From the NCBI RefSeq assembly GCF_011386835.1, contig NC_088797.1, positions 30,318,001 to 30,382,000 of the forward strand: a stretch of DNA of 64,000 nt, in the 5' to 3' direction. The stretch's first letter is position 1. Each line of letters begins with the position of its first letter. A program made the translations under genes and the position numbers. Below the pieces are notes generated by a model. That model was not told where the DNA came from, made no database searches, and saw only the letters and a program-made list of their open reading frames with translations. This document shows, in pieces, positions 2,303-38,116 of the stretch. This stretch comes from Chrysemys picta bellii (Eukaryota).

Positions 2303-3207
2303 CTTGAGGTAGCCGGGGGGGAGGGGAGGGCTCAGTCTATAACCCCCACCCACCACAGATCCAAAAGCACACAGGTATCCCTCGCCTGGTGCTGAGATGC
2401 AGCCACCTCTGGGGTGGAGAGCGGGGGCTGTTTACACTGGGATTCCTCCCCCCATGACTCACCTGAGAGGGTGGTGCGTGACTCCTGCTGGGCGAGATGG
2501 GCTGAGGTCTCTAAGGCTTCAGCAGCAGGCCCAGGTTCCTGGTGGGAGGAATCCCTTTAGAGCAATTGGGGGCAGCCCAGATGCCCCCTAACTCCATCCC
2601 CAGGCCTTCCCCTCCTCCTGTGGCTTTGCACCCCTGGCATCTAAGAGGCGGCTTCCTTTCCCACCCCCTCCCCCACAGGCAGCCCCTTCCTTGGAGTTGG
2701 GGAGGGGAGTGTGCAGGGCAGATGCCCAGATCCCACTGCCCCCCAGCCCTCCATCCCCCAGTCACTCCTACCTCCTGACAGGCACTGTCTGGTTCTTCTG
2801 GGTAATCATGGGGTGGAGGGGAGGTGCCCCTGGATGACCTGCGGTGGGAAGGGCATCCTGGTGAGAGGAGAGTATCCCCCGCCCCTCTCCAGATCAGATC
2901 AATGGGCCCGCCTGTCTTCCCCTCTCCCTGCCCAGGAGCAGACCTGTGGGCCCATCCAATCCGGTATCTCCCTCCCCCAGCTCCAGGCCAGACTGTGTTC
3001 CTATGTGGGGGGTGACTGGAGCCCTGGAGTGGAAATTCCTTTAGCACGGAACAGCTAAAAGCTTCTGTGAGGGGGGTGGATTCCATTAGGGGCATGAGAG
3101 CAGAGTCCCCTGGGGGGCATGGAGATGGTGGGGGGATGGAATGGGGAAAGCAGCATCCCTGAGGCAGGTAGGGAACTGGGATGGAGAGGCTGCTGCTGCC
3201 CCACAGG

Positions 3208-13600: not shown

Positions 13601-16240
13601 GATCATTACCTGTTAGGTTCACTCCCTCTGGGGCACCTGGCATTGGCCACTGTCGGTAGGATACTGGGCTGGATGGACCTTTGGTCTGACCCAGTATGGC
13701 CATTCTTATGTTCTTATGTAAAATAACATAAAAATATACAGATTGCGTGGGGGTTGTTTGTCTGTTTTGTAAAACGGTTCTCTAATGCATTCTAGTAATA
13801 CCTATAATGGGCACTAGGACCCTTTTTCTTAACGGGGGGCGTGGCTAGTGGCCGGGCTCTGGTGGTGGTGTGACCAGTGGACCGCATTTTGTTGTTGGTT
13901 GATGGGGTGACAGCCAGGGGCTGTGATTTGTTAGGTGGCAGGGTGGCCAGAGGCTGGGTTTTCTGCACCTTGGAGGTGGCCACCCTACTCAGGAGGGGAA
14001 CTGTGCCACACAACTCTGGGGAAAGGACCCTCCCCCCACCTCCGGGAAGGGAATCCCTGGAACACACGGGGTGGGGGCAGAGAGTGTTGGGGGAGGAAAC
14101 AGACTGGGGAGCCCCCTGGGACAGGAGCCCCAAACCAAGCTGGCCCCATAAATGGGAGAGATCTAGTGCTGGGAAGCAGAGCCAGGCTCCCGGTCCCACT
14201 ATCTGACCCCTCCTCTGCAGCACCCCTGCTCTGCACAGAGCCCGGAGAGTGGGTGCAGGGGTATGTGGGGGGACTGCTGGGGGAGCACAGGAGGCTGGGA
14301 GACCAAGGAGGACAGTGGAAGCCACTGTAGCTGCTGGACATGAGGGGCTGGAGCGGGGGAACCACTGACGACCCTGGAGCTGCTGGGTACATGGGCCCTG
14401 GCTCTGTGGGGACAGGGGGACAGGGACTCAGAGGGCACTCACCAGGAAGATATCCTCCACCTTGCCGATGGCCTGGCGCAGCGAGAAGCCCAAGTGGTCG
14501 CCCACCCCAGCCAGCAGCATCCCGAAGAGCGGGATCCCAACTAGAGCGTAGAAGATGCAGAAGAGACGCCCCCCCTCTGTCTTGGGGGATGTGTTACCGA
14601 ACCCTGGCGGGGGGGAGAGCATGGAGTCAGCAGGGAGGGGGCAGAATTGATGCCCCTTAATCCTGAACTGCAGCTCCCTGCTATCGCAGCCCTGAGCAAC
14701 CCCCCACCTCTGCCCTCAATCCCTACCCGCAGCACACACACATCCCACGGGCCAGTACCGATGGTGGTGATGATGGTGCCAGCGAAGAAGAAGGCGCTGC
14801 CCATGTCCCAGTTGGTGCTGGTGCCATTGGTGCTGTTGGCTGTGGGGTCAGCACCGGCACCCATGGTGTCTCTGACATGCTGGGGGAGACGGGAAGGGGT
14901 TAATACTAGTGGTTTTGGGTTCCCCCCCATCATGCAGCTCCTGCTGTCCCCGCCCCACATCCTTACCCCCGAACTTGACTTTCCCAGTACACATTTGCCA
15001 ACCCTTTCCTGACTGCCCCATGGCTGTTGTCCCCAGACACCTGACTGCCCCCCACCCCACTTTCCCCTTCCTCTCCCCATCTCCCCCTGGAAACCCTCCA
15101 TCAGCCTCACCCCACCCCATTACCCCCCAAATCACCCCAACCTGCATCTCCTTCTGCCCCACCCCAATGACACCTGACCCCCCCCCACCCTTCCCATGCC
15201 TCCAGCACTGTCCTTCCCCATCTACCCCTTATAACCATCCCCTCCTGCCCCCCCATTGACAACTCTGATTTCGGCCAATCTCAGGAGTCCAGCCTGGCCC
15301 AAGGGTGGGGGTGAAAAGCCCCTGTGATTGGCTGCCCTTCTCCCACTTTCTCCACCTCCTGGGAAGGACAGCCAATCAGGGATGCTGCAGGAGGCAGGTG
15401 ATGCTCTCCCCCCCCACAAGAGATATCAGCTAGAGAAGTGGGAGTGGGGGGAGAGAAGGAGCAGGGGACAGGAGGGAAGTGGGGAGGAAAGGAGAAAGAG
15501 CCCAGCAGCTTAGGGCAGCCCTGCTCCCCCCTCCAGCCCTGCCCCTCCCAGACTGGGGGAGGGTGACAAGCCCCATGGAGCTGCAAGAGGAGGGGGGCAG
15601 ATGTAGGAGGCCAGGGAGGGGATTAATTTCTGGACTGGGGGGGGGACAGAATTAATTCATTAGGATTTTAGGAAAAGCTGGAGGCTCTGCACGATCCCTG
15701 AGTCAGCGAGAGCCTCTTTCTCTTTAGGAACTGGCAGCGCTGTAACTGAGGGGACTTTCAGTGGTGGCCATAGCACTTCCCATCACCCCCACCAATGCCT
15801 GCTCCCCCCTCCCCCATGCCCCACTGCTGCTCCCCTCTTTCCCCCATCCACCACACCCCGTCCCCATTCACGCCTCACACCTGCCCCCTCCATGCCCCTC
15901 TCCCATCATCTCACCAGGATGAGTGTGTCCAGCTCCTGGCTGGGCACGCAGCGGTATCTCTGCAGAAACTGCTCACGGGCGACCTGCAGTGCCTCCTGCT
16001 GGCGGCTCTCATGCGGCTGCTCCAGCAGGCGGAAGACGAAGGCGCCGCTCACCAGGTAGACCAGCACCACGGTCAGCAGGGCCAGCACCGTAGCCCGTCG
16101 CATCACGCTGCCCTGCCCACTACGGGGTGTCTGCCCCACCCCCGCCCCACTCAGGATTGACTCCTTAGACGAGTAGCAGACAGGCAGTGCCCCATGGTTC
16201 TCGGCAGGGTGGGGGGCTGTGGAGGTCAGGGGGGAGCTCA
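7687..16240 (-). CDS. KCNK4: Two-pore-domain K+ channel TRAAK (K2P4.1)
   Basis: Phase-consistent exons 16240-15915, 14879-14759, 14603-14443, 12586-12400, 9619-9480, 8157-7687. Pore signatures TTIGFG (split across two exons) and TTIGFGDY; C-terminal [15 protein letters not shown] is KCNK4-specific. The ATG matching the human start (MRRATVL) is at 16103 (422 aa); 468 aa if read from the exon-2 acceptor. Confidence 0.97.
8560..9440. repeat. G/A-rich degenerate tandem repeat in the last KCNK4 intron
   Basis: Recurrent GGGGGATGCAAA/GGGTCTGTGGG motifs; explains the Pro/His-rich tail of ORF 8772-9818. Confidence 0.65.
9804..12230 (-). mobile_element. CR1 LINE, 5'-truncated, decayed ORF2 (RT domain)
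   Basis: ORF fragments [22 protein letters not shown] and [14 protein letters not shown]; 3' end GGCCATTCTTATG at 9804-9816; AT-rich island. Confidence 0.95.
12930..13718 (+). mobile_element. CR1 LINE 3' fragment
   Basis: ORF 13254-13523 (MIEVYKIM...RTRGHQMKL...[11 protein letters not shown]); ends in the ATTCTTATGTTCTTATGT tail. Confidence 0.95.
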
Positions 16241-21109: not shown

Positions 21110-24100
21110 TCAGACGCTGGTGCCCATAGCAGGTTCAGCGGGATCCTCCTCCGGCTCAGCTTTGGGTGCCAGCTGGGCCAAGGGGGTGCTGCCCAGGAGC
21201 CCCCTCCGAAGGACATAGGGGCAGGAGGGGCCGGAGGGGATGTCGGCAAAACCTGTGAGTGGGGCACAGAGTGAGATTGGGGTTAACGTGTGGGGGCTGA
21301 GCTCTGCTAGGGGTGAGCCCCCATCCCAGACACCTTTGGGTCCCAATCTCTCACTCCCTGGGGGCTGGGAGCACTGCTAGGGGTCCCCCCTCCACTCTCA
21401 CTCCAGTGCCCTGCTGGGGGGAAGGGCAGCTGCCTGGGGAGGGATCAGAGCCAGAATCAGTACTGCACCCCTGCCCCGCCTTGCAGAGCTCAGAGCTGCT
21501 GAGCCAGATGGAAAATCAACTGGGCGGAGGTGGGAGGGGGGGAGAATTCCTAGCTGAGCCTGGGCACAGGGCCACTGGCTGCAGGTGGCGGGGGGTGTAC
21601 TGGACTCTCATGGAGGCACAATCTGGGATGCCTCCCCCTACTCCCCTCACACTAACCCTCCCAAATTGGGGCTTCCCCTGCCCTGTACCCCTCTGCTCTG
21701 TATCTCCCCCAGAATCCCCTCCACTTCATACCCTCCTCAGTCTGCCACTCCCCTGCCCCATACCTCCTCCCTGAACCCCTCTGCTCCATAACCTGCCCCA
21801 GGCTGCCCCTCAAATGCTGCCCATCCCATAACTCCCTGAACTGCCCCCCACACCTCAGCACCCCCAGACATGGGCAGTGCCTGCACCATGTGCCTGATCC
21901 AGCTGCCCACCACGCACCTTTCATGACGACCTCAGGCAGCCCATAGGGCTCATACTGAGTGTGGTCGAAGGCCGCCGAGATGAGCTCCCTGTGGCGCCTG
22001 CCCCGCGCCGGCCCCTCCGTCTGGGTCTGGGCATCCCGCACCACCGGCCAGGCAGTCTGGAGAACTGAGAAAGAGAGACGGGGACATAAGTTAGGGGTCT
22101 GCTACCATGACGCTCCAATGCCTGGGCCTCCAGCCATGACCCCCCTTTCTCCAATGACCCTCCCCAAATACCCGGGACTCTCTCCCCACATGATTCCCAT
22201 AACTGCCCAGACCCCTCCCCCCGACCAGCAGGCAGGTGCCACCCCTCCTCCCGAAAGGCAGTGCACCCCATTGATGCCCAGCCCCCTTCCCTTGCAGAGT
22301 CAAGGGCAAAAGCCCTGATCTCACCCCCTCCCCAATTGAGCCAAAGCTCCATGTCCCCCCCTCTTACCATAAGCAAGGTCTCCCTGGCCTCTATCCCCTA
22401 GGGGCGCTGGACGGGGGGTGGCTGAGGTCCCCTGGTGTTGTCCGTCTCCAGTGGCAGGTGTGGTACATTCCTCTCGAGCGTGGGATTGCCACAGTGCCAG
22501 CTCAGCCCGCAGGGCCCGGTTCTCCTGCAACAGACGGGACAGCACCTCCTCCAGCTGGGAAGAGACGGGGGTGCGGAAAGAGAAAGGAGACAGATCCTGT
22601 TACCCCAATGAGAGCAGGGTTCAGCCCCCAAGAACCCCAACCTGACCCTGGGGCAAAGGGGTGAGGGGGGCGCCACCGAGACCAGTTTGGTCCAAGATGG
22701 AGGACACTGATGACAGATGGCTCATGGGGAAGGTGGAGGGGGTGGGGTGGGCTGTGGCATATAAAGAGTAAGGGTGTTTTGGAAGGCGGGGGGGATAGCT
22801 ACGTGGGGGTGTGTGGGAACCCAAGTTTTGGGGGAATGGGGCAGGGGAACCCTGGGTTTGGCAGGGGAGCCCCCAGTCAGGCATTGGAGCCCTGGGACAC
22901 GAGTTGGGAGGTATGGGCAAGGAAGCCCCGGGTCAGGCAGGTCAGTCGAGGGTGCATGGGGTGGAGGGAATTGGGGAAACTGCCCTCCCCCAAGCTCACT
23001 CACCTGCTCCTGCAATCCAGCCTGGCCTGCCGGCTTCTGTAGCTCCCACAGGATATTCTGCAGCGGTGCCTGCTCACTGTGCCAGGCCTGCTTCCCCGCC
23101 GGCTCCCACATCCTGCTAACCACAGCCAACTCCAGGGGAATGGGCAGCTCCACAGGAGTGGGGGAGGCCAAACTTGGGGGGCCAGACTCTGGGGCTATGG
23201 GAGGCAGCTCAGAGGGGGTGGTGGTGAGTGCCTCTGGGACTGTGGGAGGTGGCTCAGTGGGGCTGGGCTCTGGGACTGTGGAGGGCGGCTCAGGGGGAGC
23301 GGGCTCTGGGACTGTGGGGGGCGGCTCAGCGGGCGGCTCTGGGACTGTGGGGGGCGGCTCAGCAAGGCTGGGCTCTGGGACTGTGGGGGGTGGCTCAGCG
23401 GGGCCGGGCTCTGGGACTGTGGGGGGCGGCTCAGCGGAGGGCTCTGGGACTGTGGGGGGCGGCTCAGCAAGGCTGGGCTCTGGGACTGTGGGGGGCGGCT
23501 CAGCGGAGGGCTCTGGGACTGTGGGGGGTGGCTCAGCGGGGCCGGGCTCTGGGACTGTGGGGGGCGGCTCAGCGGGGGGCTCTGGGACTGTGGGGGGCGG
23601 CTCAGCAGAGCCGGGCTCTGGGACTGTGGGGGGTGGCTCAGGCAGGCCGGGCTCTGGGACTGTGGGGGGCGGCTCAGCGGGGCCGGGCTCTGGGACTGTG
23701 GGGGGTGGCTCAGCGGGGCCGGGCTCTGGGACTGTGCGGGGAGGCTCAGGGGGACCGGTGGAAGGCGTCTCCCCACCCAGCAGCACCAGCAGCCGCCCCA
23801 CCTCAGCCTCCAGCAGCTCGCGGACCCGTCCCGCCTCCCGCAGCGCCTGGCCCAGGCGCTCCAGCTCTTGCTCCCGCTCATGCCCCTCGGTCAGCAGCTC
23901 TGCCACATGCTGGCTCTGGGCCTCACAGGCTAGTGCCAGCCGCTCCGTCTGCAACCCCAGCATCTCCTGGAGCCGCCGCAGCCGCTCCTGGGCCTGGGCC
24001 GCCTGGGCCTCTGCCTCAGCCTTGCCCAGGGCCAGGGCCTTCAACTTCCCCCGCAGCACCTGCAGCTCCCCCACCTCCTGAGCATCCCCCCCAGGCAGGC

Positions 24101-27100
24101 CGGGCCCTGGTGCCCCCCAGACCTGAGCCTCCAACTCCACAGCCAGAGCCTGCAGTTCCCCCTGCTCCCCTTTGGCCAGGCCGGGCCCCAGCGCTCCCCG
24201 CAGCTCCTGGGTCTCCTCCTTGTGCTGCATGGCAGCATCATGGGCCAGCGGCATCTCAGCCAGTGCCCGGTGCTCCCCGGTCAGGTCTCGGGTGCCTGGA
24301 CGCAGCTGCCAGCAGGTTTCCAGCAGCCCCTTGTGCAGGCTCTCAGAAGCAGCCAGGCGCCGGCGCAGCCCCAAAACCTCAGCCCTCAGGGCCTGCAGCT
24401 CTGTGGGGGGCTCCGGCTCCCGGCCCCGCTCCCCACCGGGCACCAGCCTGCCCACAGCTCGGGGATCCTGTGCTGAGGAACCTGGGGGGAAGGCAAACAG
24501 AGCAGAGAGGGAGCAGTTAGGGGGACATGGTGCCAGGGGGCACCCCTGGGCCCATGTTAGGCTGCCGCAGGGTAGAGAGAGACCCCCCCAGACCTCCCCA
24601 TGGTCCCTGAGACACACACCCAGCCCCCCTTCGTAACCCCCATACCCACAGACACCACCCCTCCTACCCCCATACACCTACTCCCCTGCAGGTCCCCCAC
24701 CCCCACCACAGCCCCGGGCTGGACCCCCAAACCCACAGGGCCAAACACCCAGCCTTGTCCACTGCCCCCCTTTCAGCATCCCCTCCTCCCCCCACCTCTG
24801 ATACCCGCTTCCTCCGGGCCCTGTCTTCCCCTCCCCGGCCTCACCCTGACCCCACTCCCTCATCTCACCTCTGACCTTCCCAGCTGCCCCTCGTTTCTCG
24901 GGTGCCCGCTCCAGCCGGGAGCTGCTGAGGCTGCGCCGGCCACAGCCTGGGGGGCGCCGCTGCTGCTCTGATCCCCCCAGGCCCTGCTGAAGATAGGTGT
25001 GTGAGTGACGTGGGCTCTGACAGGGCAGGGGCCTGGCTGGCTCAGAGGGGTGGGAAATGGGATATGAGGCACTGGCTCCATTTGCTGATTAAACAGTCCC
25101 TTCTGCCCCTTGGCACCGACACCTCTCTCACCTTGTTTGGTGGGCGGTGGGGGGGCTCAGGGATGTCCAACCGGGTAACCTGCTGCTCCAGCGCTTCCCG
25201 ATGGTGCCGCTCCAGCTTCGCCAGCTCCTGCAACAGACAGGGGGTGATATGCAACATGACAACTGCCGGAGCCCCAAGTGCGGGGTGGAGGGGATCCAAG
25301 GGGTCTCCCTGTGGTGAGTGGGGGGCTCAGCCTGGTGGGACCCCAGCCCTAGCTGAGTGCAACACAGTCCTTTCGGGTCCCCTTGTAAGGCTGTTCTGGC
25401 CTGAGAAGCACTTGGCCAGCCACAGCAGTGTGGGGCTGTTGCACACAGGGGGGATTAGTGCAGTGGGGTCAGGGGCTGAAGGGAGGGGAGGAAAGTGGCA
25501 GGGTACTATTGGGAAGGTGGGGCTGTGCTGGGTGTGGGGGAGGGACTGTGAGGTGGGGATGAGGCGCCTGGGGGAGGGGGCTGTGCCAAGTTGGGGGGAT
25601 TGTGCCGTAGAAGGGAGTAGCAGGGTGTGGGCTGTGCAGCACGGGTTCTCCCACCTGCCGGTGCTCCCTCTCCTGCTGCTCCAGGCGGCGCTGCGTGGCC
25701 CCTGCTCTCTGCCTCTGGCCCCTCAGCTCCTCCAACAGCTGCTGCACCCGCCGTTCCAGGGCACTCACCTGGGGGGGCAACAATGTGTCAGACTTGGGCA
25801 AGCCCTCCAGTGGCTCCATGGAGAACCAACAGACACCCCAAGGGCTACATCCCTCACCTAGCCCCTCCAGAGGTGCCAGTTCTGTGTATCCTGCTTGTTC
25901 ACCACAGCTGGGGAGGGGAGGATGGGATCTGCAACAGGAATATGAGTGGGGGGGATAAAGATAAAGGGGGGTGCAATCCCTCCCCCTCCCCTCTGGGGCT
26001 GCCTCATAGCACCAGGGCCAATCAGAGGGGGGGGGCTAGGAGAGCCTCAAGCTCAAAGGGGGCCTCAAATTTAGACACTTGTTAATTTTTTGGCATTTGA
26101 TAAATTTCACAACTTGTTTTTATGCGCATCCCTATCGGACCGAAATGTGACAGACTCTCTCAGCTTAGAGCTGCAGATTTAAGCAAATACGAGATGTGAT
26201 CTGGTAAAAGACATCATTTTTTTGTTAACTGATATAGATTTTGTCATATTAAAGAGTTAAAAATGTTCATAAATATTAATAAAAATGTATCGGTTCTGAT
26301 GGGACAAGATTAGACCACGTGTCATAATTTTTGATGTTTATTATGGCTAGGGGCCTCTCTGGACCTCTGAGAGGGCCCAAATAGCGCCACTGCATTCTCT
26401 GCTCTAGGCCTCCCCCCTCTGATCCCTGCAGCCCCTGTGCTCCAAGGACTAGAGCCCCACCTCGTGGCAGCAGTCAGTACTGCACCCTGCAGCAGCTCCA
26501 TGCCCCCCACCGTGTGGCAGCAGGCGGTACTGCACCCTGCAGCAGTTCCATGAGCCTCCAAGTGGCCCTTCCCACCCAGTATGAGGCTAACCCATTTTCC
26601 CTCTGGTCTCTCCCATGCTCACCTTAGTGACTGCCTGGTCCCGCTGCTCTGTGCACTGGGCCAACTCCTGCTGCACTGACTGCAGTTCCCCCCTCAACTC
26701 CCAGGCCTCCATGTCAGGGGGGCCTTGCCCCGGCCCTGCAGGGGAGAGGATAGGGGTGAGAAACGGCAATGCTGCCCTCAATGGCCTGGGGCCATTACCC
26801 TCCTGCTCTCCTCCACCATCATGAGCCATATGGGCTTCCACCACTGGCACCAAGGACGGGCTGGGCCCATAGTCCTTGAGTCTAGTTCCTCACACCCCTC
26901 CACCCCTGCACCCCTTGGCTCATCCCCAGGGCCAGCTCTAGGCACCAGCATTCCAAGCAGGTGCTTGGGGCGGCACTTCTCAAGGGGCAGCATTCTGGCC
27001 CTTTGGGGGCGGTTCTTTTCAAGGGGCGGCACTCTGGGTTTTTTTTATTTTATTTTTTTGCTTGGGGCGGCAAAAAACCTGGAGCCGGCCCAGCTCATCC

Positions 27101-29664
27101 CCCTCCCCAGCCACCACTGGACACCAGCCCCAGTTCTCTCCTGTGCAGACCCCCCCCAAACCGGACACCAGCCCCAGTGTAACCAAGTTACCCAGAATGC
27201 TTCACTCCCAGGAACTGGAGATCAGCCTGGATCTCAGGGGTGAGAACAGGGGGGTTCCCTCTAATGCCCCTCCCCTGGCCCAGTCCTTCCCAGGACCCAT
27301 CCAGATCCCCACTATAGGAAGGGCAGGGCAGGGTCAGGTTGGGGGGCTGGGTGACCTGCTCACAAGGAGAAACTGCCATAGCTAGGTTGGGCGTGAAGAG
27401 GTTAACTTCCCACCCACACACACACAGTCTCTCCCAACATCATTGGAGTTTTACCTGCATTCTCCTCTCTAGGTTCCTCCCCAGGGGATGGGATCCCCTG
27501 ACTGTTCTCTGGGGGGGCAGGGCCCCCAGGAGGGACACTGTGCCAGGCAGCCCCTCGATGCACGAGCGGCTCCTCCCCCAATGTGGAGCTGCTGGGCTGC
27601 AACTGGAGAAGGGGAGATAAGGGGGTGAGGGATACAGGCCTTTACTAAATGCACCCCAGTTGTATGGGGCAGGGGCTTCAGCTCAGGAGTGAGGGGCACA
27701 AGCAGATAGAGGCAGGGCCACCCAGAGGATTCAGGGGACCTGGGGTCTTCAGCAGCGGGAGGCCCCTGCCGCTGAATTGCCGCCGAAGACCCGGCATTTC
27801 AGCGGCGGGTCCCGGGGCGGAAGGATCCCCTGCCGCAGAGGTCTTCAGGGCACTTCAGCAGCGGGTCCCGGAGCGGAAGGACCCCCCGCCGCCAAACTGC
27901 CGCCGAAGACCCAGAGCGGAAGAAGCTCCGGGGGTCCGGGCGCCACGAGAGTTTTCCGGGGCCCCCGGAGCGAGTGAAGGACCCCGCTCCAGGGGCCCCG
28001 AAAAACTCTTGTGGGGGCCCCTGCGGGGCCTGGGGAAAATTGTCCCACTTGCCCCCCCCTCTGGGCGGCCCTGGATAGAGGTGGGAGAACCAAGGCCTGG
28101 GATACCAGGGGGCTGCAGGTTGGGATTGAGGGACACTGGCAGAGCTGGAGGTGGGGGAACTTGGGGTGGGATGGTGGGGGTTGGAGGTCGGGGTTGAGGG
28201 TCACCCTCTGTACTCACTCTCATGCTGGGTGTTCGGGGTCTGTTCTCTAGTCTGGGATTTTGCTCCCAGGTGCTCAGCTCAACTCCTGCGAGGAGACAGA
28301 CCTGGTCAGCTCTGCAGGGCCGATGACCAGCTCCCCAAGGGGTCAGACTGTCCCCCCCCCACCCCCTCCTCAACAGTCTGCAACAAGCTCTAATCCCCCA
28401 TCAGCCTGGGACAGGAATGAGCCCCCCTCCCTCCTGCCCTCCTCACCTTCATCCTGGGGGGCCCAGCAATGGAGCAGGGGGGTGCTTGACCGCAGGTTAT
28501 CCAGCTCTGCCTGGCACCTGGGGGGACCCCAGAGAGAGATTAGTGCTGCTTGCCAGGTGCCCCCTCATACCCATCCCCAGTGCCCCCCATCCCCATAGCT
28601 CCCCCAGTGCCCCTCACCCCAACACTGCTCCACTCAGCCCCATCCCCCACCCCGCACAGTGTTCCCCCCACCCCAACACCACAAATCACTCCCTTCGGTG
28701 CCCCTCATCATCCTCTGGGCACCCCCCCACACTCTTACTCTGCCCCCTGATCCTGCCACCACTATCCCAACAATGTACCTCCCAGATTCCCTCACCTTTC
28801 CCCAGGCACCACCCCCAGATCACACCATCCCTACCCCAACAATATCCCCTACTGCACTCTCACATCCCCTCACCTTCCCTTGGGCACCCCCCAATCCTGA
28901 CCTCCAGATACCCCTGGGCACTTCCTCCACCTGCTCCTGGGCAGCACCCCACTTAGTGCTGTTCCCCCTCCTGTCTCAGGCAGTGCCTCTGACACCCCCC
29001 CTTGTCCCACTGGCATCCCCATCCCCCGGCCAGTACCTCCGCAGCTCCTCCTCCAGCTCCTCAATGCGCTGGGTGGCCCGGCCCAGCTGCCCCTCCAGCT
29101 GGCTCAGTTGCGCCCCCTTTGCCTGGAGCTCCCGGCTCAGTTGCTGGCGCCCGCACTCCAGCCGCTCGCAGGCCTCGGCCAGGTCCCGCCGCTCCCGGGC
29201 CAGCAGCGCCCACGTGCCACGCTCCTCCTTGTGCTACAAGGGATGGAGTGTGAGCGTGCAAGGCCGGGGGGAGAAGCCCAAGAGTGCACAGCCCAGAGGT
29301 GGGGGCATATGGTGGGCATGGAGACACGAACTCTGCTCTGGCCCAGGGCTGGGAGAACTGGCTGGTTCAGGAGCATGGGGCATGGGCAATGGGCCTTGCA
29401 GCATGGCCACTGACTCAGCCATAACGGTGCTTGGCCTGCTGGGAGCCACGGGCTGCCCTCCCTGGGTGCCACCCCCCATCAGTGTGGGGGGCACCCATGT
29501 ACCTTCTGCCTCTGCTTGTGTAGCACGGCCTCCAGTGTGTCCAGCTGTGCCTGCTTCTGGACCCGCTCCTTGTTGGCCCACTCCAGGCGCTGCTCCAGCT
29601 CCCTCACCCCCTGCAGTGCCCGTGCCGGCAGCCCCTCCTGCCAAGCCTCGCCTGGCCAGCTCAT
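21110..29664 (-). CDS. Centromere protein F-like coiled-coil protein (short CENP-F paralogue, ~1013 aa)
   Basis: Thirteen GT-AG exons with consistent phase: 29664-29503, 29233-29037, 28517-28447, 28285-28218, 27602-27455, 26735-26623, 25768-25655, 25227-25132, 24986-24869, 24481-23004, 22554-22368, 22064-21918, 21252-21110 (3042 nt). The N-terminus MSWPGEAWQEGLPARALQGVRELEQRL resembles CENP-F MSWALEEWKEGLPTRALQKIQELEGQL. The C-terminal YEPYGLPEVVMKGFADIPSGPSCPYVLRR resembles CENP-F FEPEGLPEVVKKGFADIPTGKTSPYILRR. Confidence 0.88.
23229..23752 (-). repeat. Coding minisatellite, 15 units of 36/33 bp encoding (A/P)EPPPTVPEP(G)P
   Basis: GGGACTGTGGGGGGCGGCTCAGCGGGGCCGGGCTCT units; eleven 12-aa-type and four 11-aa units, all frame-preserving. 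Confidence 0.95.
26927..27093. mobile_element. hAT-type MITE (CAGGGCCGGCTC family)
   Basis: Slightly mutated TIRs; perfect 8-bp TSD CTCATCCC (26919-26926, 27094-27101). Confidence 0.85.
27713..28073. mobile_element. hAT-type MITE, second family
   Basis: TIRs CAGGGCC(A/G)CCCAGAGG; perfect 8-bp TSD GATAGAGG (27705-27712, 28074-28081). Confidence 0.88.
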
Positions 29665-29769
29665 GGCGCCCTCTCCCCTGCCCAAGGCTGGGCCCCTCCA
29701 GCCCCTGCTGCTTGCTCCAAGGACAGACACTGCCGGGATGCAGCAGGGATTAGCAGGGATTAGACATCA

Positions 29770-32425: not shown

Positions 32426-35400
32426 CTAGGTCTGCGGGGTGGAGTAGAGGCTGTGGTGGTGGCTGGCCTGCACAGTGACCTGGGAGAAGAGCAGGGGAGT
32501 TGTGGGGGGCTGCCCCCCCAGCCAGTCCGGATCCCTCCCAGTCCGGCCAATGGCTCCATACCAGCTGCCGCTGCCCAGTCGGCCTGCCAGGCTGCAAGGC
32601 AGAGGGGGGGGGGGGTTACATGGAGTACCATCCTTCCATCCCACTCCCCAGAATAGGGTCCCCCCCATCTGCCCCACCCCTCCCCAAGCAGAGCCCCAGC
32701 AGGCATGAATCCAGAGGGGTTAGCTCCCAGCATGCAGTGCTCCAACGCTCCATTAGTGAGACCCCATTGGGGGTCAGTTCTCCTCCAGGGACCTTAAACC
32801 CAATGGAGGGAGAAGGACCCTGTGGACTCCCTCCCCACCCATTTATTCTCCCCCCAGGGGGTGTTACCTGCTGCTTCCCCTGGGGAGGGGCTCGCTCTGG
32901 TACTGCCCGGGGGACTAGAGGTCAAGGGGGGGGGTTACCTGCTTCCCTTCCTGCGGGAGGGCCCCTCGTTCTCGTATTGCCCGGGGTGGTCGAAGAAGTA
33001 AGACCGGGAGCCCCCGAGCTGCCCATTGATGATGTGGTTGGCACTCTGCCAGGGGGCGGAGGAGAGAAGAGACAGGCTATTATTGTAGAGGGAGGCCAGG
33101 TTTCTCTTCACCGCCCCCTCCCCCCTTCCCCAGGTGATTGCGACCCACCAGGCTGACCCACAGGAGAAGGGCTGTTCTGTGAGTGTGTGTGTGTGTGTGT
33201 GTGTGTAGATCCCCCCTGCCAGGCTGAGGCCTGCAACACCTTGTGGGGGTCCCCCCCTCTGCTGTAAGACTCCTGCCCCATAGAGGAAGCCATATTGCGC
33301 CAGCCCAGCTGTGCCATGAGGAGGGGGTTGGGGAATCCCTCATTGCTGGGAGGTACTCTGTGGGGGGGCCCTTCCTGACCCCAGGAGCTGCTAACTGACA
33401 TCTCAGCAGGCCACGCCCCTCCTCCCCGGCCTGGCATAACAAGTGGGCCTGCAAACCCACCCTGACTGCGAGAAGGGAGCGCAAGCTCAGAACACGTCAC
33501 AAGAGCCGGGGCCAGCAAACGCTGACAGGAAAGGAGCAAACGGAGCTGGATGCTGACGGATTTAACGCAAGGGCTGCTAATCAAGAGACGTGTCAGCCCA
33601 GAAATCAAGGGACCAAAATGGGTGTGTTGGAAATTAGGCCTAACTGGTGGACAAAATACTGAGGGGCTGGGCTTTCCTGCCCCTCACCCCCCTTCTGGGG
33701 CCCTTCAAAGAAAAGACTTTGGGGACAGGAAAAACAGGCTAATAACACCCAGGGATTGAGACAGGAGACCAGAAAAAGAGGCTGGCTGCTCCCCCATCTC
33801 CTGGGACCTCTGGATCCAGCATGATATCATTGGGCCTCTGTCATCCTGACCCTAGGAGATGCTCTTATCAGACCAGGCAAAGATGGACCCAGATGACACC
33901 TCCACCAGCTTTATTAAATACAAACACCACCTGGGAGACAGACTGTCACCCCATCCCATGCGTCCTTTTCCTCCCCCTGTTCCTCCATTATTTCTTCTCT
34001 TTCCCCTCCCTCTCCTTATGCCTCTTGTCTAATGAGCGGCTGGCTTAGCAGGCCCACACTGCAAATTTTGCAACACTGCCGTACACCTACGACCAAAGAG
34101 GCAGCTCAAAGCAGTGGCCTGAGGAGCCCGGAGCGGCTGGGGGGGTCCCTGTGCCCAGCCTGTGTTTCTCCAGCAGGGAGGCTGCAGGTGAAAGTCGGCT
34201 CCACAGAGGCCACGTTTCTCACTTGGCCGGGAGTTTTAATGTCCTATTGCGTGTTTGTCTTGTTTTGTTTTCTAGGGACCAGGGTGGGACCTTAGCAACG
34301 ACACCAGCCCAACCCTTCTGAACTAACTTCTGCTCCCCATCACGGGACAGTTATTACACCTTTACTGGCACCTCAGAGGCTGCCAGACGGGTTTTGCCCT
34401 TCCAGAAACTCCCCCCCGAGGGGAACTGGCACAAGGGCTGGGGTTACAAGTCTGCCTTTTCACATTTGAAACACTTTCACTGATTCGCCTCCTTTAGCTG
34501 TATCTGGTACCAAAGGTTCAGAGGGTGTTTAATGGGGTGGCTGCCATGGGGCTGAGCAGACCAAGGTCCCTGTACTCAAAATCCCAATTAAACCTTGGTT
34601 AGATCTGGATAGTGCCAGGGTCACGCAAACATCTTTGATTCTCTGCATCCAGTTATTCCTCCACAATTAACCCCGCAGGCCCTGCTCCACTCCCCCAATC
34701 CTGGGCTCCAGCTGCCCCACTCACCAGGTCCTGGGGAGGGCGGTGCACCCGGAAGAAGCCCACCAGTAGGGCAGTTGGCAGCAACTCCCACACAAAGAGG
34801 ATGAGGCCAAAGACCAAGTATCCTTGGTCCCCCAGGTCAGTGATCAGATCTGCCTGGAGGGGTGGGGGGAGACCGTTCAGATTCCTTTGGGGGTCTGGCC
34901 ACCAGCCCCAGGTGCCCGCTAAATTTTCACCAGCCAAAACGAGGCTCTGCCGAAGGGCTGAGGTGCTGCCCCCCCAAGAACAGAGAGCAAACAGTGGGGG
35001 AGAGATTGTGCCCAACTCCCCCAAACAGAGAGTTAGAGACACCAGTCCCCATGGAGGGGCAGCCCCCCGAGTCACCTAACCTCCCCGAACCACACCCACC
35101 CCTCCACCACATCCTGGAGCATCCCCCCAACTACCCTCCACATGCACCATACCCCCCCAGCCTTCTGGAGCCACTCACTCCCCCAGCCCCGCCATCTCCA
35201 CCCACAACACCTTGCAGGCCCCCTTGCCTCTCCATCGGTGCCAGCCCCCTCCCTGGAAGTCCCCCACTGTCTGCACTGACCTGGTCCGAAACATTGTACC
35301 AGTCGTAGTCGAAGGAGTCCAGCCGGGTGTGGGAGCTCAACGCCAGGGCCACCAGGTTGTAGCAGGCACGGCTGGCGTGCAGCAGCACCATGGTGCCACC

Positions 35401-38116
35401 CATGGCTGCTGTCTGGCACACTGTGGTGCCCTGGGGAGGGAGGGAGACAGATGCAGGCACCATTCCTGCGACTCAACCTCCCGAACCCATTCCCAAAGGA
35501 TTCCCATCAGGCCCGTGGGCCCTCCCAAACCCACCCAGGTAGCATGGTCTCTGGCCAGTGCCAGATGGCACCTCCTAGAGGGAAGCTCCATGTCCCATTC
35601 CCCCCAACCCTCCGTCCAGCCAGTCCCCCACAGGCTGGGGTCAGATCGGAGCCAGCACCCCCTAGGGGTGAAGGGCCCAGTATCCCATTCCTAACCCTCC
35701 TGAGCCAGCCAGTGCCCCGGCTCTGGGACTGGATTGGAACCAGCACCCCCTAGAGGAAAAGGATGTGTCCCACCTTGGCCTGCAGGTAGAGGCTGGTGCT
35801 TGGTGAGCCGCGAGCCACGAGGCAGAGGCAGAGCGCCAGGGTGATAGCACCCAGCACGAAGAGTGAGTCATTGATGAGGACACGGGTCAGCACCACGGCC
35901 CAGGGCTCGGCCCGCCCCAGCCGCACCACGAAAGCACAGGCCACGTTCACTGCCAGGAAGAGCAGGCTGGCGCCCAGGCAGGCCCCCCGCACGGCCAGCC
36001 TGTGGGAGAAACTGAGACTGAGGGACCAGCCTGGAGACATACTGTTCCCCTCCTGCCCTGGGGGGCAGATCTACTCTGCCAGTCCCTTCCACTCCCCGCC
36101 CCCAGCTCTGCTGCCCCGTCCTTACCCGATCTCTCTGCAGAGCATTCCCTCCCCTCCAGATCCTTCTTCCCGACTCAGTGCAGCTCTCCTACTACGTTCC
36201 CTGCCCCTCCCACTCTCCCCAGATCCCCTCCCCACCACAGTCTCCCATCCTTGCCCCTCCCCCATCTCTCCAGCTTCCCCCTCCTTCCCCCCAGCTCAAT
36301 CCCTAAGCAGCTTTGCTGCTGGGCTCAGAGGATGCTGGGGGGGCAGGGGGGGAAGGTGCCCACACAGGGAGCCAGTCCAATCCCACTCCTCCCACCAGCC
36401 TTTGTTCCAGCCCTGCCCAGGGAAGGGGGGTGGGCACAGAGCCTCTATGCCCATTAGGCCAAAGCCACCAGCACCAGGGAATGTGGGGCACAGAGCCAGG
36501 CTGGGGGTGAGATGGCCCCAATTCAGCTGAGTGACTTCTGGATTTTATCCCTGGGTCTGGAAGGGGAGTGGGGTGTAGTGGGTTCCAGTGGGGCGAGGAG
36601 GTGTCAGGACTCCTGAGTTCTATTCCCAGCTTGGGGCATGGAGGGGCTATAAGTGGGTATGGGGTAGGGGGGAGTGTGGGGGGGATACTCACAGCCCTTT
36701 GGTCATGTTCGGGTGGTACTTAGCTTTAGCCTTGAACACCACCTAAGGAAGGGGGGCAGAGTTAGGGTCACAGCCTAACGGGCACCCCTCCACCAGCACA
36801 TGCCCCTTGCAGCGTGACTGAGGAGGCAGAGTCCAAGGGAGATGAGTTGCAAAACATCAACAAACAGAACGTGCCCCCCCGCCCCCAACAAGCCAGACCC
36901 AACCACAGTCAGAGCGCACCAGAGCCAGCAGGGAATGCAGCAAAAATTGGGGGCACAGCAGTAACAGGTGCAACCCCCCATGTGCAGCCCCTCCCCCGCA
37001 AAGGGAGAGAGGCTGGGTCTCTGGGGCTTGGTCATCCCTCACAAGACTCACCACTAAGGGCAGGATTTCATTAGAGGGGAAAGGTCCCATATCTCATTCC
37101 CTACACCTCTCACCAAGCCAGTCCCCCCTGCCCCGCCCCACCCCACCCTGTCCAGGGACAGACTGGTGCAAGCGCCCCCTAGAAGGGAAAGACCATGTTT
37201 CCCATTCCTCAACCCCATAGCCAGATAGTCCCCTCCCTCCATTCCACTGCTCCTCCCCCGCACCCTAAATGCTTCCCCAACTGATTTTCTGTCCCACGTT
37301 GGAGTCCTCTCCATGGGGCAGGGACAAGGCACTCAGCATCACAGGATGCTACTTTCTGGAGTCTGGACACGCCTATGACCCCATCACTGGGGTATCTGGG
37401 CACCTCCACAAATATTTATGCAAGCAGCATATGAAGGGAGTGGGGATTAGTGGGTTAGAGAGCAGGTAGGGGGCTACTGGGTTCTGTCCTCAGCTCTGAG
37501 AGGGGAATTGGGTCTAGTGGGCTAGAGCTGGGAGTCAGGACTCCTGGGTTCTGTCCCCAGCTTTGGAAGATGAGTGGGGCTTTAGTGGTTAGAGAAAGAG
37601 TTGGGAGCCAGGACTCCTGAGTTCCCTCCCCAGCTATGGGAAGCGCCAAGCAAGGAAAAGTGAAGCCAGGTGTGCGGAAACCCAAGTTGATGGCTTTTAC
37701 TCACAGGGCTGAGCCGTGAAGCCCCCCTCACCCCACCCCACCCTGATTACCTGGGCAAAGTAGAGGTTCATGAGCGTCAAGGTGAAGAACTGGAGGCAGA
37801 CGGGGCAGCAGTAGAGCAGCCAGTAGAGGAAGGGCCCCAGCTGGTTGGCCTTGAGAGTGTTCTTGAAGTAGAAGGAGAAGAGTGTGGTGCGGAGGGTGGC
37901 CCAGAGCAGGCAAAGGAAGAGGAAGACGGTCTGATAGCTGAACTTCTTGTGCCGGTAGAGCAGCACCAGCCACAGCTGGGCATAGACTGAGAGGAAGAGC
38001 AGGGCATACAGCGCCGTGTACAGCGCTGTGAGCCCCAGCTTGACCGCCGGGGGAAAAGCTGGCGTCAGGCGCTGGGCTGGCACAATCACCGTCAGGTTGC
38101 TGGCAGCTTGCTCCAT
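32426..38116 (-). CDS. GPR137: Integral membrane protein GPR137 (397 aa)
   Basis: Exons 38116-37751, 36742-36693, 35999-35774, 35430-35281, 34853-34725, 33045-32939, 32591-32426; phase-consistent. Motifs [17 protein letters not shown] and C-terminal [11 protein letters not shown] match GPR137. Confidence 0.96.

What the first reader, a model, noticed from the sequence alone, without database searches (positions are those of the whole stretch)
21110..29664. A 'mini-CENP-F': second, short CENP-F family gene
Seen: a complete 13-exon, ~1013-aa ORF whose first and last exons resemble the two ends of CENP-F. By my recollection of human CENP-F, the first 54 residues align without gaps at roughly 55-60% identity. 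Later exons track ...ELKR|CKSEL, ...YDQASTK| and YTALEQKLKKL...CQRQ. Known: human CENP-F is ~3100 aa and treated as single-copy, and no such gene lies between GPR137 and KCNK4 in human. Inference: an intact, probably unnamed paralogue that lost about two-thirds of the rod but kept both functional ends, i.e. a second microtubule/kinetochore-type adaptor in reptiles.
Basis: partly seen in the sequence, partly recalled or inferred. Interest (0 to 1): 0.92.

Follow-up and report, generated by a model that had tools for sequence, protein, structure and literature searches.

The report
Ancient short CENP-F paralogue in turtle
The stretch holds a real, expressed 13-exon gene that is the turtle copy of an old, unstudied sister gene of CENP-F; it keeps only CENP-F's head and its mitochondria-docking (Miro-binding) tail, so it is more likely a mitochondria adaptor than a kinetochore protein.

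Summary
A 13-exon, all GT-AG, 1013-aa ORF lies on the minus strand at 29664-21110. It equals NCBI's Chrysemys picta "uncharacterized protein LOC122173687" except for one NAGNAG glutamine. Spliced RNA contigs from four runs confirm all nine junctions from exon 1 to exon 10.

Pfam finds CENP-F_N (123 bits, positions 1-131 of 304) and CENP-F_C_Rb_bdg (69 bits). It finds no CENP-F_leu_zip, and the protein has no CAAX end.

This is a second CENP-F family gene, but not a reptile-made truncation of CENPF.
- Trees split the family 100/100 into CENPF proper and a "CENPF-like" clade.
- That clade runs from rays and sharks through sturgeon, teleosts (zebrafish si:dkeyp-115e12.6), coelacanth, salamanders, caecilians and squamates to turtles.
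- Members are 1400-2200 aa in fish and amphibians, and 600-1100 aa in reptiles.
- None was found in birds, crocodilians, mammals or frogs.

Intron positions and phases are shared with CENPF. Its place (GPR137 - gene - KCNK4) mirrors CENPF-KCNK2 on human 1q41, which fits a whole-genome-duplication origin.

The conserved tail is the published 42-aa Miro-binding motif (G-F-A-D, then V-L-R twelve residues on). dN/dS is 0.4-0.6 overall and about 0.3 at both ends. Probable role: a Miro/mitochondria adaptor. This is inferred, not shown.

The parts
29503..29664 (-). Exon 1 (ATG at 29664; aa 1-54), start of the CENP-F_N domain
   Evidence: model. Pfam CENP-F_N 60.5 bits on this exon alone. Junction 29503|29233 seen in RNA contigs of X2 and X4. 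59% identical to human CENP-F residues 1-54.
29037..29233 (-). Exon 2 (aa 55-120), CENP-F_N positions 57-119
   Evidence: Pfam 46.2 bits. Phase-2 donor ...ELR|R shared with dolphin CENPF. Junctions seen.
28447..28517 (-). Exon 3; the CENP-F_N match ends inside it (aa 131, about 28484)
   Evidence: Junction 29037|28517 in X4. An alternative acceptor 7 nt inside the exon (28510) appears in X2.
28218..28285 (-). Exon 4
   Evidence: Junctions 28447|28285 and 28218|27602 in X2 and X4.
27455..27602 (-). Exon 5
   Evidence: Junctions seen.
26623..26735 (-). Exon 6 (ends ...QRDQAVTK, the counterpart of CENPF ...YDQASTK)
25655..25768 (-). Exon 7 (VSALERRVQQLLEEL..., the counterpart of CENPF ...ALEQKLKKL...)
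25132..25227 (-). Exon 8
24869..24986 (-). Exon 9, with a NAGNAG acceptor (24986 or 24983). The RNA contigs use 24983, which gives the 1012-aa isoform.
23004..24481 (-). Exon 10, the large rod exon (492 codons)
   Evidence: Junction 24869|24481 in X2, X3 and X4. It sits after the same phase-1 intron that precedes the giant exon of CENPF.
23802..24095 (-). Central coiled-coil block (aa 491-588, ...GKAEAEAQA...QTERLA...). It is conserved in the CENPF-like clade only.
   Evidence: An HMM built from reptile sequences hits axolotl (7e-17), sturgeon, reedfish, coelacanth and carp. It hits 0 of 142 CENPF-proper proteins.
23232..23758 (-). In-frame 36-nt tandem array, about 15 copies (PTVPEP(G/S)xAEPP). 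Proline-rich, variable in copy number among turtles, absent in lizards.
   Evidence: TRF, alignment, dN/dS about 0.9-1.0.
22368..22554 (-). Exon 11
   Evidence: canonical splice sites. Same exon in Natator and Carettochelys. Not covered by read laying.
21918..22064 (-). Exon 12 (ends ...YEPYGLPEVVMK), first half of the CENP-F_C_Rb_bdg / Miro-binding peptide
   Evidence: Pfam 22.8 bits. The phase-1 intron after VVMK is shared with dolphin CENPF, arowana and gecko.
21110..21252 (-). Exon 13 with the stop codon (protein ends ...GTSV). It holds GFADIPSGPSCPYVLRR (about 21252-21203), which is the Miro ELF-pocket motif plus the beta-strand.
   Evidence: Pfam 34.3 bits. Motif residues compared with PMC10897228.
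32429..35448 (-). Upstream neighbour GPR137 (exons; context only)
   Evidence: tblastn of gecko GPR137 ORFs. Pfam GPR137_N is found on the neighbour in the gecko, Natator and Carettochelys loci.
15909..16103 (-). Downstream neighbour KCNK4 (TRAAK), first coding exon (context only)
   Evidence: Best PDB matches are KCNK4 (60 bits), ahead of KCNK10 (52.7) and KCNK2 (45.5).

Best explanation
The locus is the painted-turtle orthologue of an ancient vertebrate paralogue of CENPF, here called the 'CENPF-like' or class B clade. Zebrafish si:dkeyp-115e12.6 belongs to it.

Origin. The paralogue arose by duplication of a whole genomic segment before sharks and bony vertebrates split, most simply in the 2R genome duplications. 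It sits beside KCNK4 as CENPF sits beside KCNK2. It was later lost, or at least is not annotated, in mammals, birds, crocodilians and frogs. In reptiles its rod shrank to 600-1100 aa.

Product. The turtle gene is intact, spliced and expressed as modelled. It encodes a mostly coiled-coil protein with three conserved modules:
1. The first ~130 residues of the CENP-F N-terminal domain.
2. A clade-specific central coiled-coil block.
3. A C-terminal peptide about 45 aa from the end. It matches residue for residue the CENP-F peptide that docks into the ELF pocket of the mitochondrial GTPase Miro: Gly-Phe-Ala-Asp, then Val-Leu-Arg at the same 12-residue spacing.

Likely mechanism (inferred). The tail docks the protein on Miro at the mitochondrial outer membrane. 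The coiled-coil head couples it to whatever the CENP-F head binds, microtubules being the best-documented candidate. It lacks the parts of CENP-F that serve kinetochore and nuclear-envelope work: the leucine-zipper repeats, the kinetochore-targeting region and the farnesylated CAAX end.

Shown: gene structure, expression, family placement, age, synteny in reptiles, purifying selection, motif conservation. Inferred: Miro binding, microtubule binding, cellular role.
For: Gene model and expression:
- 13 GT-AG exons and a 1013-aa ORF.
- It equals NCBI LOC122173687.
- Nine junctions are confirmed by spliced contigs, including one 1232-nt contig that runs from exon 10 to exon 2.

Domains:
- CENP-F_N 123.3 bits and CENP-F_C_Rb_bdg 69 bits, with no leu_zip.
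- CENPF proper from a bird, coelacanth and shark has all three domains.

Phylogeny:
- Class A and class B form one bipartition at 100/100 in two trees.
- Class B follows the species tree from ray and sawshark to turtles.
- Coelacanth, axolotl, the caecilian Geotrypetes, arowana and four turtle species carry both genes.

Shared intron positions and phases:
- 0,2,1,0,1,0,0,0,0,1, then a giant exon.
- A phase-1 intron lies inside VV(K/M)K|GFADIP in dolphin CENPF, arowana, gecko and turtle.

Synteny:
- GPR137 - gene - K2P channel in the window, a gecko and two more turtles.
- The channel is KCNK4.
- Human CENPF lies next to KCNK2 and near ESRRG (gene order in PMC6503150).

Miro motif:
- CENPF 2977-3020 is necessary and sufficient for Miro binding. 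F2989 enters the pocket, D2991 makes a salt bridge, the preceding Gly is vital, and ILR 3001-3003 forms a trans beta-strand (PMC10897228; PMC4538849).
- The turtle has G966-F967-A-D969 and V979-L-R981.
- The motif is invariant in all 28 class B sequences aligned.

Selection:
- Whole-gene dN/dS is 0.41-0.62, with bootstrap intervals that exclude 1.
- It is about 0.3 at both ends and about 1 in the proline repeats.
Against: - No binding was tested. No Miro sequence could be obtained, so no complex prediction was run.
- Reptile proteins match only positions 1-131 of the 304-position CENP-F_N model. By my recollection the microtubule-binding region of CENP-F was mapped to a longer N-terminal fragment, so microtubule binding may be weakened or lost.
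- dN/dS of 0.4-0.6 is rather relaxed for an essential adaptor.
- Synteny with KCNK4 and GPR137 was shown only in reptiles. The one fish locus read (arowana) has an RD3-family gene as its neighbour within 10 kb.
- Absence in birds, crocodilians, mammals and frogs rests on annotated or predicted proteins only. GC-rich regions such as this one are often missing from bird assemblies.
- The 2R origin is inferred from paralogous neighbours and the age of the split, not from a formal paralogon analysis.
Confidence: 0.72

Rival explanations
1. One reading: a second microtubule/kinetochore adaptor that does CENP-F-like mitotic work in reptiles.
For: It shares the CENP-F N-terminal domain and the C-terminal Pfam domain. 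The CENP-F head binds microtubules (cited in PMC4538849). Orthology tables map zebrafish si:dkeyp-115e12.6 to CENPF, and so it is placed in G2/M marker lists (PMC12891946). That is a mapping, not an expression result.
Against: There are no CENP-F_leu_zip repeats. Nothing aligns to CENPF between residue ~135 and ~935. There is no CAAX box. The conserved tail is the Miro-docking peptide. Turtles keep a full-length CENPF for the mitotic role.
Confidence: 0.12
2. A decaying relic. The gene is transcribed but drifting towards loss in reptiles, as already happened in mammals and archosaurs. The conserved ends are only the slowest-decaying parts.
For: The rod shrank from about 2000 aa to 600-1100 aa in reptiles. 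One N-terminal exon was lost. The central proline repeats evolve at dN/dS of about 1. Whole-gene dN/dS is 0.4-0.6. Several turtle gene models in the databases are truncated.
Against: The ORF is intact, with the same 13 exons, in Chrysemys, Natator and Carettochelys, whose split is deep within turtles. A related intact ORF is present in a gecko. The bootstrap intervals of dN/dS exclude 1, and both ends are at about 0.3. The C-terminal 45 residues are nearly invariant from ray to turtle. The transcript is correctly spliced.
Confidence: 0.08
3. An Rb-binding protein, taking the Pfam name of the C-terminal domain literally. On this reading it is a nuclear cell-cycle regulator acting through pocket proteins.
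For: Pfam names PF10490 'Rb-binding domain of kinetochore protein Cenp-F/LEK1', and the turtle protein scores 69 bits against it.
Against: The 40 residues that match PF10490 are the same residues mapped as the necessary-and-sufficient Miro-binding peptide. In CENPF the sequence continues for ~125-135 residues after this peptide. In class B only about 45 mostly acidic residues follow it.
Confidence: 0.05

Closest known systems
CENP-F / mitosin / LEK1 (CENPF proper, class A)
   Same: The first ~130 residues are about 50% identical (59% over the first 54 residues against human). It has the same C-terminal Miro-binding peptide. Intron positions and phases are the same across the N-terminal ten introns and inside the C-terminal peptide. 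Both have a long coiled-coil rod encoded largely by one giant exon.
   Different: It is one third of the length. It has no CENP-F_leu_zip repeats and no alignable kinetochore-targeting region. There is no ~125-135-aa tail after the Miro peptide and no CAAX farnesylation signal; the protein ends in GTSV. It forms a separate clade at 100/100 support and sits at a separate locus beside KCNK4.
Vertebrate 'centromere protein F-like' genes (zebrafish si:dkeyp-115e12.6; annotated in Erpetoichthys, Acipenser, Latimeria, Rhinatrema, Anolis, Varanus and others)
   Same: Orthologous clade. It shares the C-terminal signature YEPYGLPEVVMKGFADIPSGPxCPYVLRRGLLG about 45 aa from the end, the central GKAEAEAQA...QTERLA block and the exon pattern.
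   Different: The turtle protein is about half the length of the fish and amphibian members. It matches only 131 of the 304 positions of CENP-F_N, where ray and axolotl match the full domain. It has lost one N-terminal exon. It has gained a turtle-specific proline-rich 36-nt tandem array.
Miro clients with an ELF-pocket motif (CENPF, TRAK1/2, MYO19, MTFR1/2/1L, VPS13D, Parkin; PMC10897228)
   Same: It carries the FADI core with the preceding Gly, the Asp two residues after Phe, and a downstream (I/V)LR strand at the CENPF spacing. The motif lies in a non-coiled, conserved terminal segment.
   Different: Binding is untested for any class B protein. No study names it as a Miro client; the paper's FADI motif search covered the mitochondrial proteome of MitoCarta only.

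Membership tests
CENP-F family (Pfam architecture) | CENP-F N-terminal domain (PF10481) | tested here: met
   123.3 bits against a cut-off of 37.7, but only model positions 1-131 of 304. Single exons 1 and 2 each pass on their own.
CENP-F family (Pfam architecture) | C-terminal PF10490 domain (named 'Rb-binding'; it coincides with the Miro-binding peptide) | tested here: met
   69 bits against a cut-off of 21, residues 947-986.
CENPF proper (orthologue of human CENPF) | Tandem CENP-F_leu_zip repeats (PF10473) | tested here: not met
   No hit at E<=0.001 in the turtle, gecko, axolotl, arowana or ray proteins. Present twice in bird, coelacanth and shark CENPF.
CENPF proper (orthologue of human CENPF) | C-terminal CAAX farnesylation box, about 125-135 aa after the GFADIP motif | tested here: not met
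   The turtle protein ends in GTSV, 47 residues after the motif starts. Class A proteins end in C-x-V-Q.
CENPF proper (orthologue of human CENPF) | Groups within the CENPF clade in a tree | tested here: not met
   It falls in the other clade; the bipartition has 100/100 support.
CENPF proper (orthologue of human CENPF) | Kinetochore-targeting (Bub1-binding) and Nde1/Nup133-binding regions | tested here: inconclusive
   BLASTP finds no alignment to dolphin, bird or coelacanth CENPF outside residues 1-135 and 933-986. No dedicated profile for these regions was available.
CENPF-like clade (class B; si:dkeyp-115e12.6 orthologues) | Clade membership and the C-terminal signature about 45 aa from the end | tested here: met
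CENPF-like clade (class B; si:dkeyp-115e12.6 orthologues) | Central conserved coiled-coil block that is absent from CENPF proper | tested here: met
   Turtle aa 491-588. The HMM hits 34 long class B proteins and 0 of 142 class A proteins.
CENPF-like clade (class B; si:dkeyp-115e12.6 orthologues) | Conserved position between GPR137 and KCNK4 | tested here: inconclusive
   Met in Chrysemys, Natator, Carettochelys and a gecko. Not seen within 10 kb in arowana. The ray and caecilian loci gave no neighbours.
Miro ELF-pocket clients | Conserved Phe/Leu in a conserved loop, often with an adjacent acidic residue and a downstream trans beta-strand (criteria of PMC10897228) | tested here: met
   G966-F967-A-D969 ... 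V979-L-R981, at the same spacing as human F2989/D2991/ILR3001-3003. Invariant across class B.
Miro ELF-pocket clients | Physical binding to Miro1/2 and Miro-dependent mitochondrial recruitment | not testable with these tools

The most novel reading that the evidence does not exclude
Class B may be a dedicated Miro-to-cytoskeleton linker that most non-mammalian vertebrates still use. Its Miro peptide is more strictly conserved than that of CENPF itself. On this reading the mitochondrial function of CENP-F in mammals is the leftover of a job once shared with, or mainly done by, this sister gene. That would explain why abolishing CENP-F-Miro binding in mice gave healthy animals (as reported in PMC10897228). 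It would also make the zebrafish gene si:dkeyp-115e12.6 the right place to find the physiological role of this interaction.
Probability: 0.3. Interest if true: 0.7.

Novelty: new member of a known kind. Interest (0 to 1): 0.5.

Why it matters
CENP-F is treated in the literature as a single-copy, multi-purpose giant that serves the kinetochore, nuclear envelope, microtubules and mitochondria. This locus shows that most jawed vertebrates outside mammals and archosaurs carry a second family member. That member amounts to a natural separation-of-function version: head plus Miro-docking tail, without the mitotic modules. Its tail is almost frozen from rays to turtles.

No paper in the searched library studies it. 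It is an obvious, testable candidate Miro client.

It is also a practical warning. In many fish it is auto-named 'centromere protein F'. Its zebrafish member is used as the CENPF stand-in in a G2/M marker list.

Tried and rejected
- Deep synteny. The arowana locus shows only an RD3-family neighbour within 10 kb. The ray and caecilian loci returned no DNA or neighbours. The stickleback, Pelodiscus and Chrysemys products were not on record. Linkage to KCNK4 outside reptiles therefore stays open.
- The bird CENPF locus for exon comparison was not on record, so dolphin was used instead.
- Searches of this scan's earlier notes for CENPF or KCNK2 elsewhere in the genome gave nothing. The presence of full-length CENPF was shown in four other turtle species, not in Chrysemys itself.
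- I considered and rejected an extra exon in the repeat-rich stretch 27700-28150, where 'GLRRQF' peptides resemble CENPF 'PIRRDF'. RNA contigs join 28218 directly to 27602, and that stretch behaves as a dispersed repeat.
- A Logan-derived fragment (P0018) was checked as a possible archosaur copy. It is closest to squamate sequences.
- No structure or complex prediction was run. The protein is mostly coiled coil or proline repeat, and the one informative partner (Miro) could not be supplied.
- Literature searches for a CENP-F ohnologue or paralogue, 'CENPF-like' and the zebrafish gene name found no study of this gene.
Full report
WHAT IS THERE

Reading the minus strand between 29800 and 21000, I assembled 13 exons by script:
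- E1 29664-29503
- E2 29233-29037
- E3 28517-28447
- E4 28285-28218
- E5 27602-27455
- E6 26735-26623
- E7 25768-25655
- E8 25227-25132
- E9 24986-24869
- E10 24481-23004
- E11 22554-22368
- E12 22064-21918
- E13 21252-21110

All introns are GT-AG, the phases are consistent, and the ORF is 1013 aa with a single terminal stop.

A database search with the large exon returned the same protein as Chrysemys picta bellii 'uncharacterized protein LOC122173687 isoform X2' (1012 aa). It differs from my model by one Gln at the CAG|CAG acceptor of exon 9.

IS IT EXPRESSED AND SPLICED AS MODELLED?

Contigs of four runs of one study were laid on 23750-29749. They show joints with CT..AC ends on the + strand (GT..AG on the gene's strand) at every predicted junction from E1/E2 to E9/E10. 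One 1232-nt contig runs from exon 10 to exon 2.
- The contigs use acceptor 24983, which gives the 1012-aa form.
- One run shows a minor acceptor 7 nt inside exon 3.
- One contig retains intron 1.

The runs are only guessed to be RNA, but intron-less GT-AG joints say so. They rest on canonical splice sites and on an identical structure in Natator, Carettochelys, a gecko and an arowana. The word share is also about 0.25 in the same study's runs, against 0.97 in DNA runs. Other runs of the same species label hold none of the words, so expression is probably not ubiquitous.

FAMILY

Pfam on the whole protein:
- CENP-F_N: 123.3 bits, model positions 1-131 of 304.
- CENP-F_C_Rb_bdg: 69 bits, residues 947-986.
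- Nothing else of note.

CENPF from a buzzard, coelacanth and catshark has a full-length N domain, two CENP-F_leu_zip repeats and the C domain. BLASTP of the turtle protein against CENPF aligns only residues 1-135 and about 933-986. The first 54 residues are 59% identical to human CENP-F without gaps.

NOT A REPTILE NOVELTY

An exhaustive profile-free search and two word-indexed searches, with names from cluster look-ups, show two classes.

Class A is CENPF proper:
- 2400-3800 aa.
- The GFADIP motif lies ~125-135 aa from the C-terminus.
- It ends in a CAAX box (C-x-V-Q).

Class B:
- 600-2230 aa.
- The motif lies 35-47 aa from the C-terminus.
- It has no CAAX box.
- It carries the signature (A/V)(F/Y)D-x-T-x-YEPYGLPEVVMKGFADIPSGPxCPYVLRRGLLG.

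Class B includes a stingray, a sawshark, sturgeon, paddlefish, reedfish, gar, bowfin and many teleosts. In teleosts it is often auto-named 'centromere protein F', or 'si:dkeyp-115e12.6' after zebrafish. It also includes coelacanth, axolotl, a newt, two caecilians, many squamates and about 15 turtles, among them a side-necked turtle.

Maximum-likelihood trees on the concatenated N- and C-terminal blocks separate A from B at 100/100 (bootstrap/SH-aLRT). Each clade roughly follows the species tree.

Both genes occur together in coelacanth, axolotl, Geotrypetes and arowana. They also occur together in the turtles Chelonia, Gopherus, Mauremys and Emydura, on contigs of different size.

No class B protein from birds, crocodilians, mammals or frogs turned up. 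Class A from all of these did. A nameless fragment that might have been archosaurian is squamate-like.

MODE OF ORIGIN

Mapping proteins on their loci gives the same intron positions and phases in dolphin CENPF and arowana class B. The pattern is 0,2,1,0,1,0,0,0,0,1, then a giant exon. Both also have a phase-1 intron inside VV(K/M)K|GFADIP. Turtles have the same series minus one phase-0 intron. The two genes are therefore genomic duplicates, not retrocopies.

In the window, the gecko, Natator and Carettochelys the order is GPR137 - gene - K2P channel, all on one strand. The channel's first exon matches KCNK4 best, then KCNK10, then KCNK2.

Human CENPF lies directly beside KCNK2, a few genes from ESRRG. 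A 1q41 deletion lists the genes in the order SMYD2, PTPN14, CENPF, KCNK2, KCTD3, USH2A, ESRRG (PMC6503150). From general knowledge, not tested here, human 11q13 reads GPR137-KCNK4-CATSPERZ-ESRRA. Earlier notes of this scan place a CatSper-zeta candidate at the start of this window.

Paralogous neighbours plus a split older than the shark/bony-vertebrate divergence fit an origin in the vertebrate genome duplications. This is an inference. Fish synteny could not be confirmed.

SELECTION

Codon alignments were threaded from exact protein-to-locus maps. Nei-Gojobori estimates with 300 bootstraps:

| Comparison | dN/dS | 95% interval |
|---|---|---|
| Chrysemys-Natator, whole gene | 0.62 | 0.49-0.82 |
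| Chrysemys-Carettochelys, whole gene | 0.46 | 0.38-0.55 |
| Chrysemys-gecko, whole gene | 0.40 | 0.31-0.50 |

- In the Chrysemys-Carettochelys comparison the first 135 and last 83 codons are at about 0.3. In the closer Chrysemys-Natator pair they are at 0.75 and 0.46, with intervals that include 1.
- The proline repeats are at 0.9-1.0.
- Synonymous divergence (0.13) is close to intron divergence (0.11) for Chrysemys-Natator.

The gene is therefore constrained: moderately overall and clearly at its ends.

A third conserved module lies in exon 10 at aa 491-588. An HMM built from reptile sequences hits it in class B from axolotl, sturgeon, reedfish, coelacanth and carp. The same HMM hits none of 142 class A proteins.

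The 36-nt tandem array (about 15 copies, 23232-23758) encodes PTVPEP-type repeats. These vary in number among turtles and are missing in lizards.

WHAT IT PROBABLY DOES

The residues that match Pfam's 'Rb-binding' model are the same residues that Kanfer et al. and Covill-Cooke et al. mapped as the necessary-and-sufficient Miro-binding peptide of CENP-F (2977-3020). In that peptide:
- F2989 inserts into the ELF pocket of Miro's first EF-hand domain.
- D2991 pairs with Miro R263.
- The preceding glycine is vital.
- ILR 3001-3003 adds a strand to the GTPase-1 sheet (PMC4538849; PMC10897228).

The turtle protein has G966-F967-A-D969 and V979-L-R981 at identical spacing. These positions do not vary in any class B sequence aligned. 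By the eye of the alignment, the peptide is more uniform in class B than in class A.

The most economical mechanism is Miro-dependent docking on mitochondria through the tail. The coiled-coil body and the CENP-F-type head would supply the second contact. Microtubules are the documented partner of the CENP-F head. However, reptiles keep only the first 131 model positions, so that half of the model is weaker.

Sarcopterygian class B proteins also end in (S/T)-x-V: GSSV, SSGV, GTSV, GTGV. This is a PDZ-ligand-like end, which another first-stage note had flagged. I did not test it.

The kinetochore reading is unlikely, because every module that serves that role in CENP-F is missing and turtles retain CENPF itself.

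NOVELTY AND VERDICT

The gene is predicted in public annotation, and in many species it is already called 'centromere protein F-like'. I found no paper that treats it as a distinct gene. Its only mention is as the CENPF stand-in in a zebrafish G2/M marker list.

I file it as a new (uncharacterised) member of a known kind. Interest is moderate. The attractive point is a natural 'head plus Miro tail' version of CENP-F that can be tested directly in zebrafish.

Noticed in passing
window 27700-28150 (intron 4): There are two or more direct copies of an ~80-nt unit (GGGTCTTCGGCGGCA..TT..GCGGC...GCTGCTGAAG). RNA-contig depth here is very high (up to 335), with many loose ends and odd joints. It behaves as a dispersed, transcribed repeat (SINE-like), not as an exon. 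Its translation mimics the CENPF 'PIRRDF' stretch by chance.
   Followed up: partly
window 28510 / 28517 and 24983 / 24986: Two alternative acceptors are seen. One contig (run X2) joins exon 2 to 28510, which is 7 nt inside exon 3 and shifts the frame. Exon 9 has a NAGNAG acceptor, and the RNA contigs use the downstream AG (24983).
   Followed up: partly
window 29206-29524: One 320-nt contig in run X4 runs unspliced across intron 1 (intron retention or pre-mRNA).
   Followed up: no
window 26080-26330 (intron 6) and 26455-26552: A sharply AT-rich insert sits in an otherwise 60-65% GC locus, and some contigs cover it. Next to it is a 50-nt unit repeated twice. It is probably a transposon remnant.
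   Followed up: no
window 15909-16103 (-) and 32429-35448 (-): The first coding exon of KCNK4 (TRAAK-like, [10 protein letters not shown]...) and the exons of GPR137 flank the gene on the same strand. The order is conserved in a gecko and two other turtles.
   Followed up: yes
proteins P0227-P0316; PMC12891946: In many teleosts the class B gene is auto-named plain 'centromere protein F'. The zebrafish member, si:dkeyp-115e12.6, stands in a G2/M marker list, evidently as the CENPF orthologue. This is a likely orthology mix-up that could distort cell-cycle scoring in fish single-cell data.
   Followed up: partly
C-termini of class B proteins; window 21113-21124: Coelacanth, salamander, caecilian, lizard and turtle class B proteins end in (S/T)-x-V (GSSV, SSGV, GTGV, GTSV). 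Ray-finned fish end in acidic residues (..EETD..ELEP). The class-I PDZ-ligand-like end is conserved across sarcopterygians.
   Followed up: partly
L002:2107-3474: In arowana the nearest called neighbour of class B is an RD3-family gene. From memory, human RD3 lies on 1q32, not far from CENPF, which may be another trace of the paralogon.
   Followed up: no
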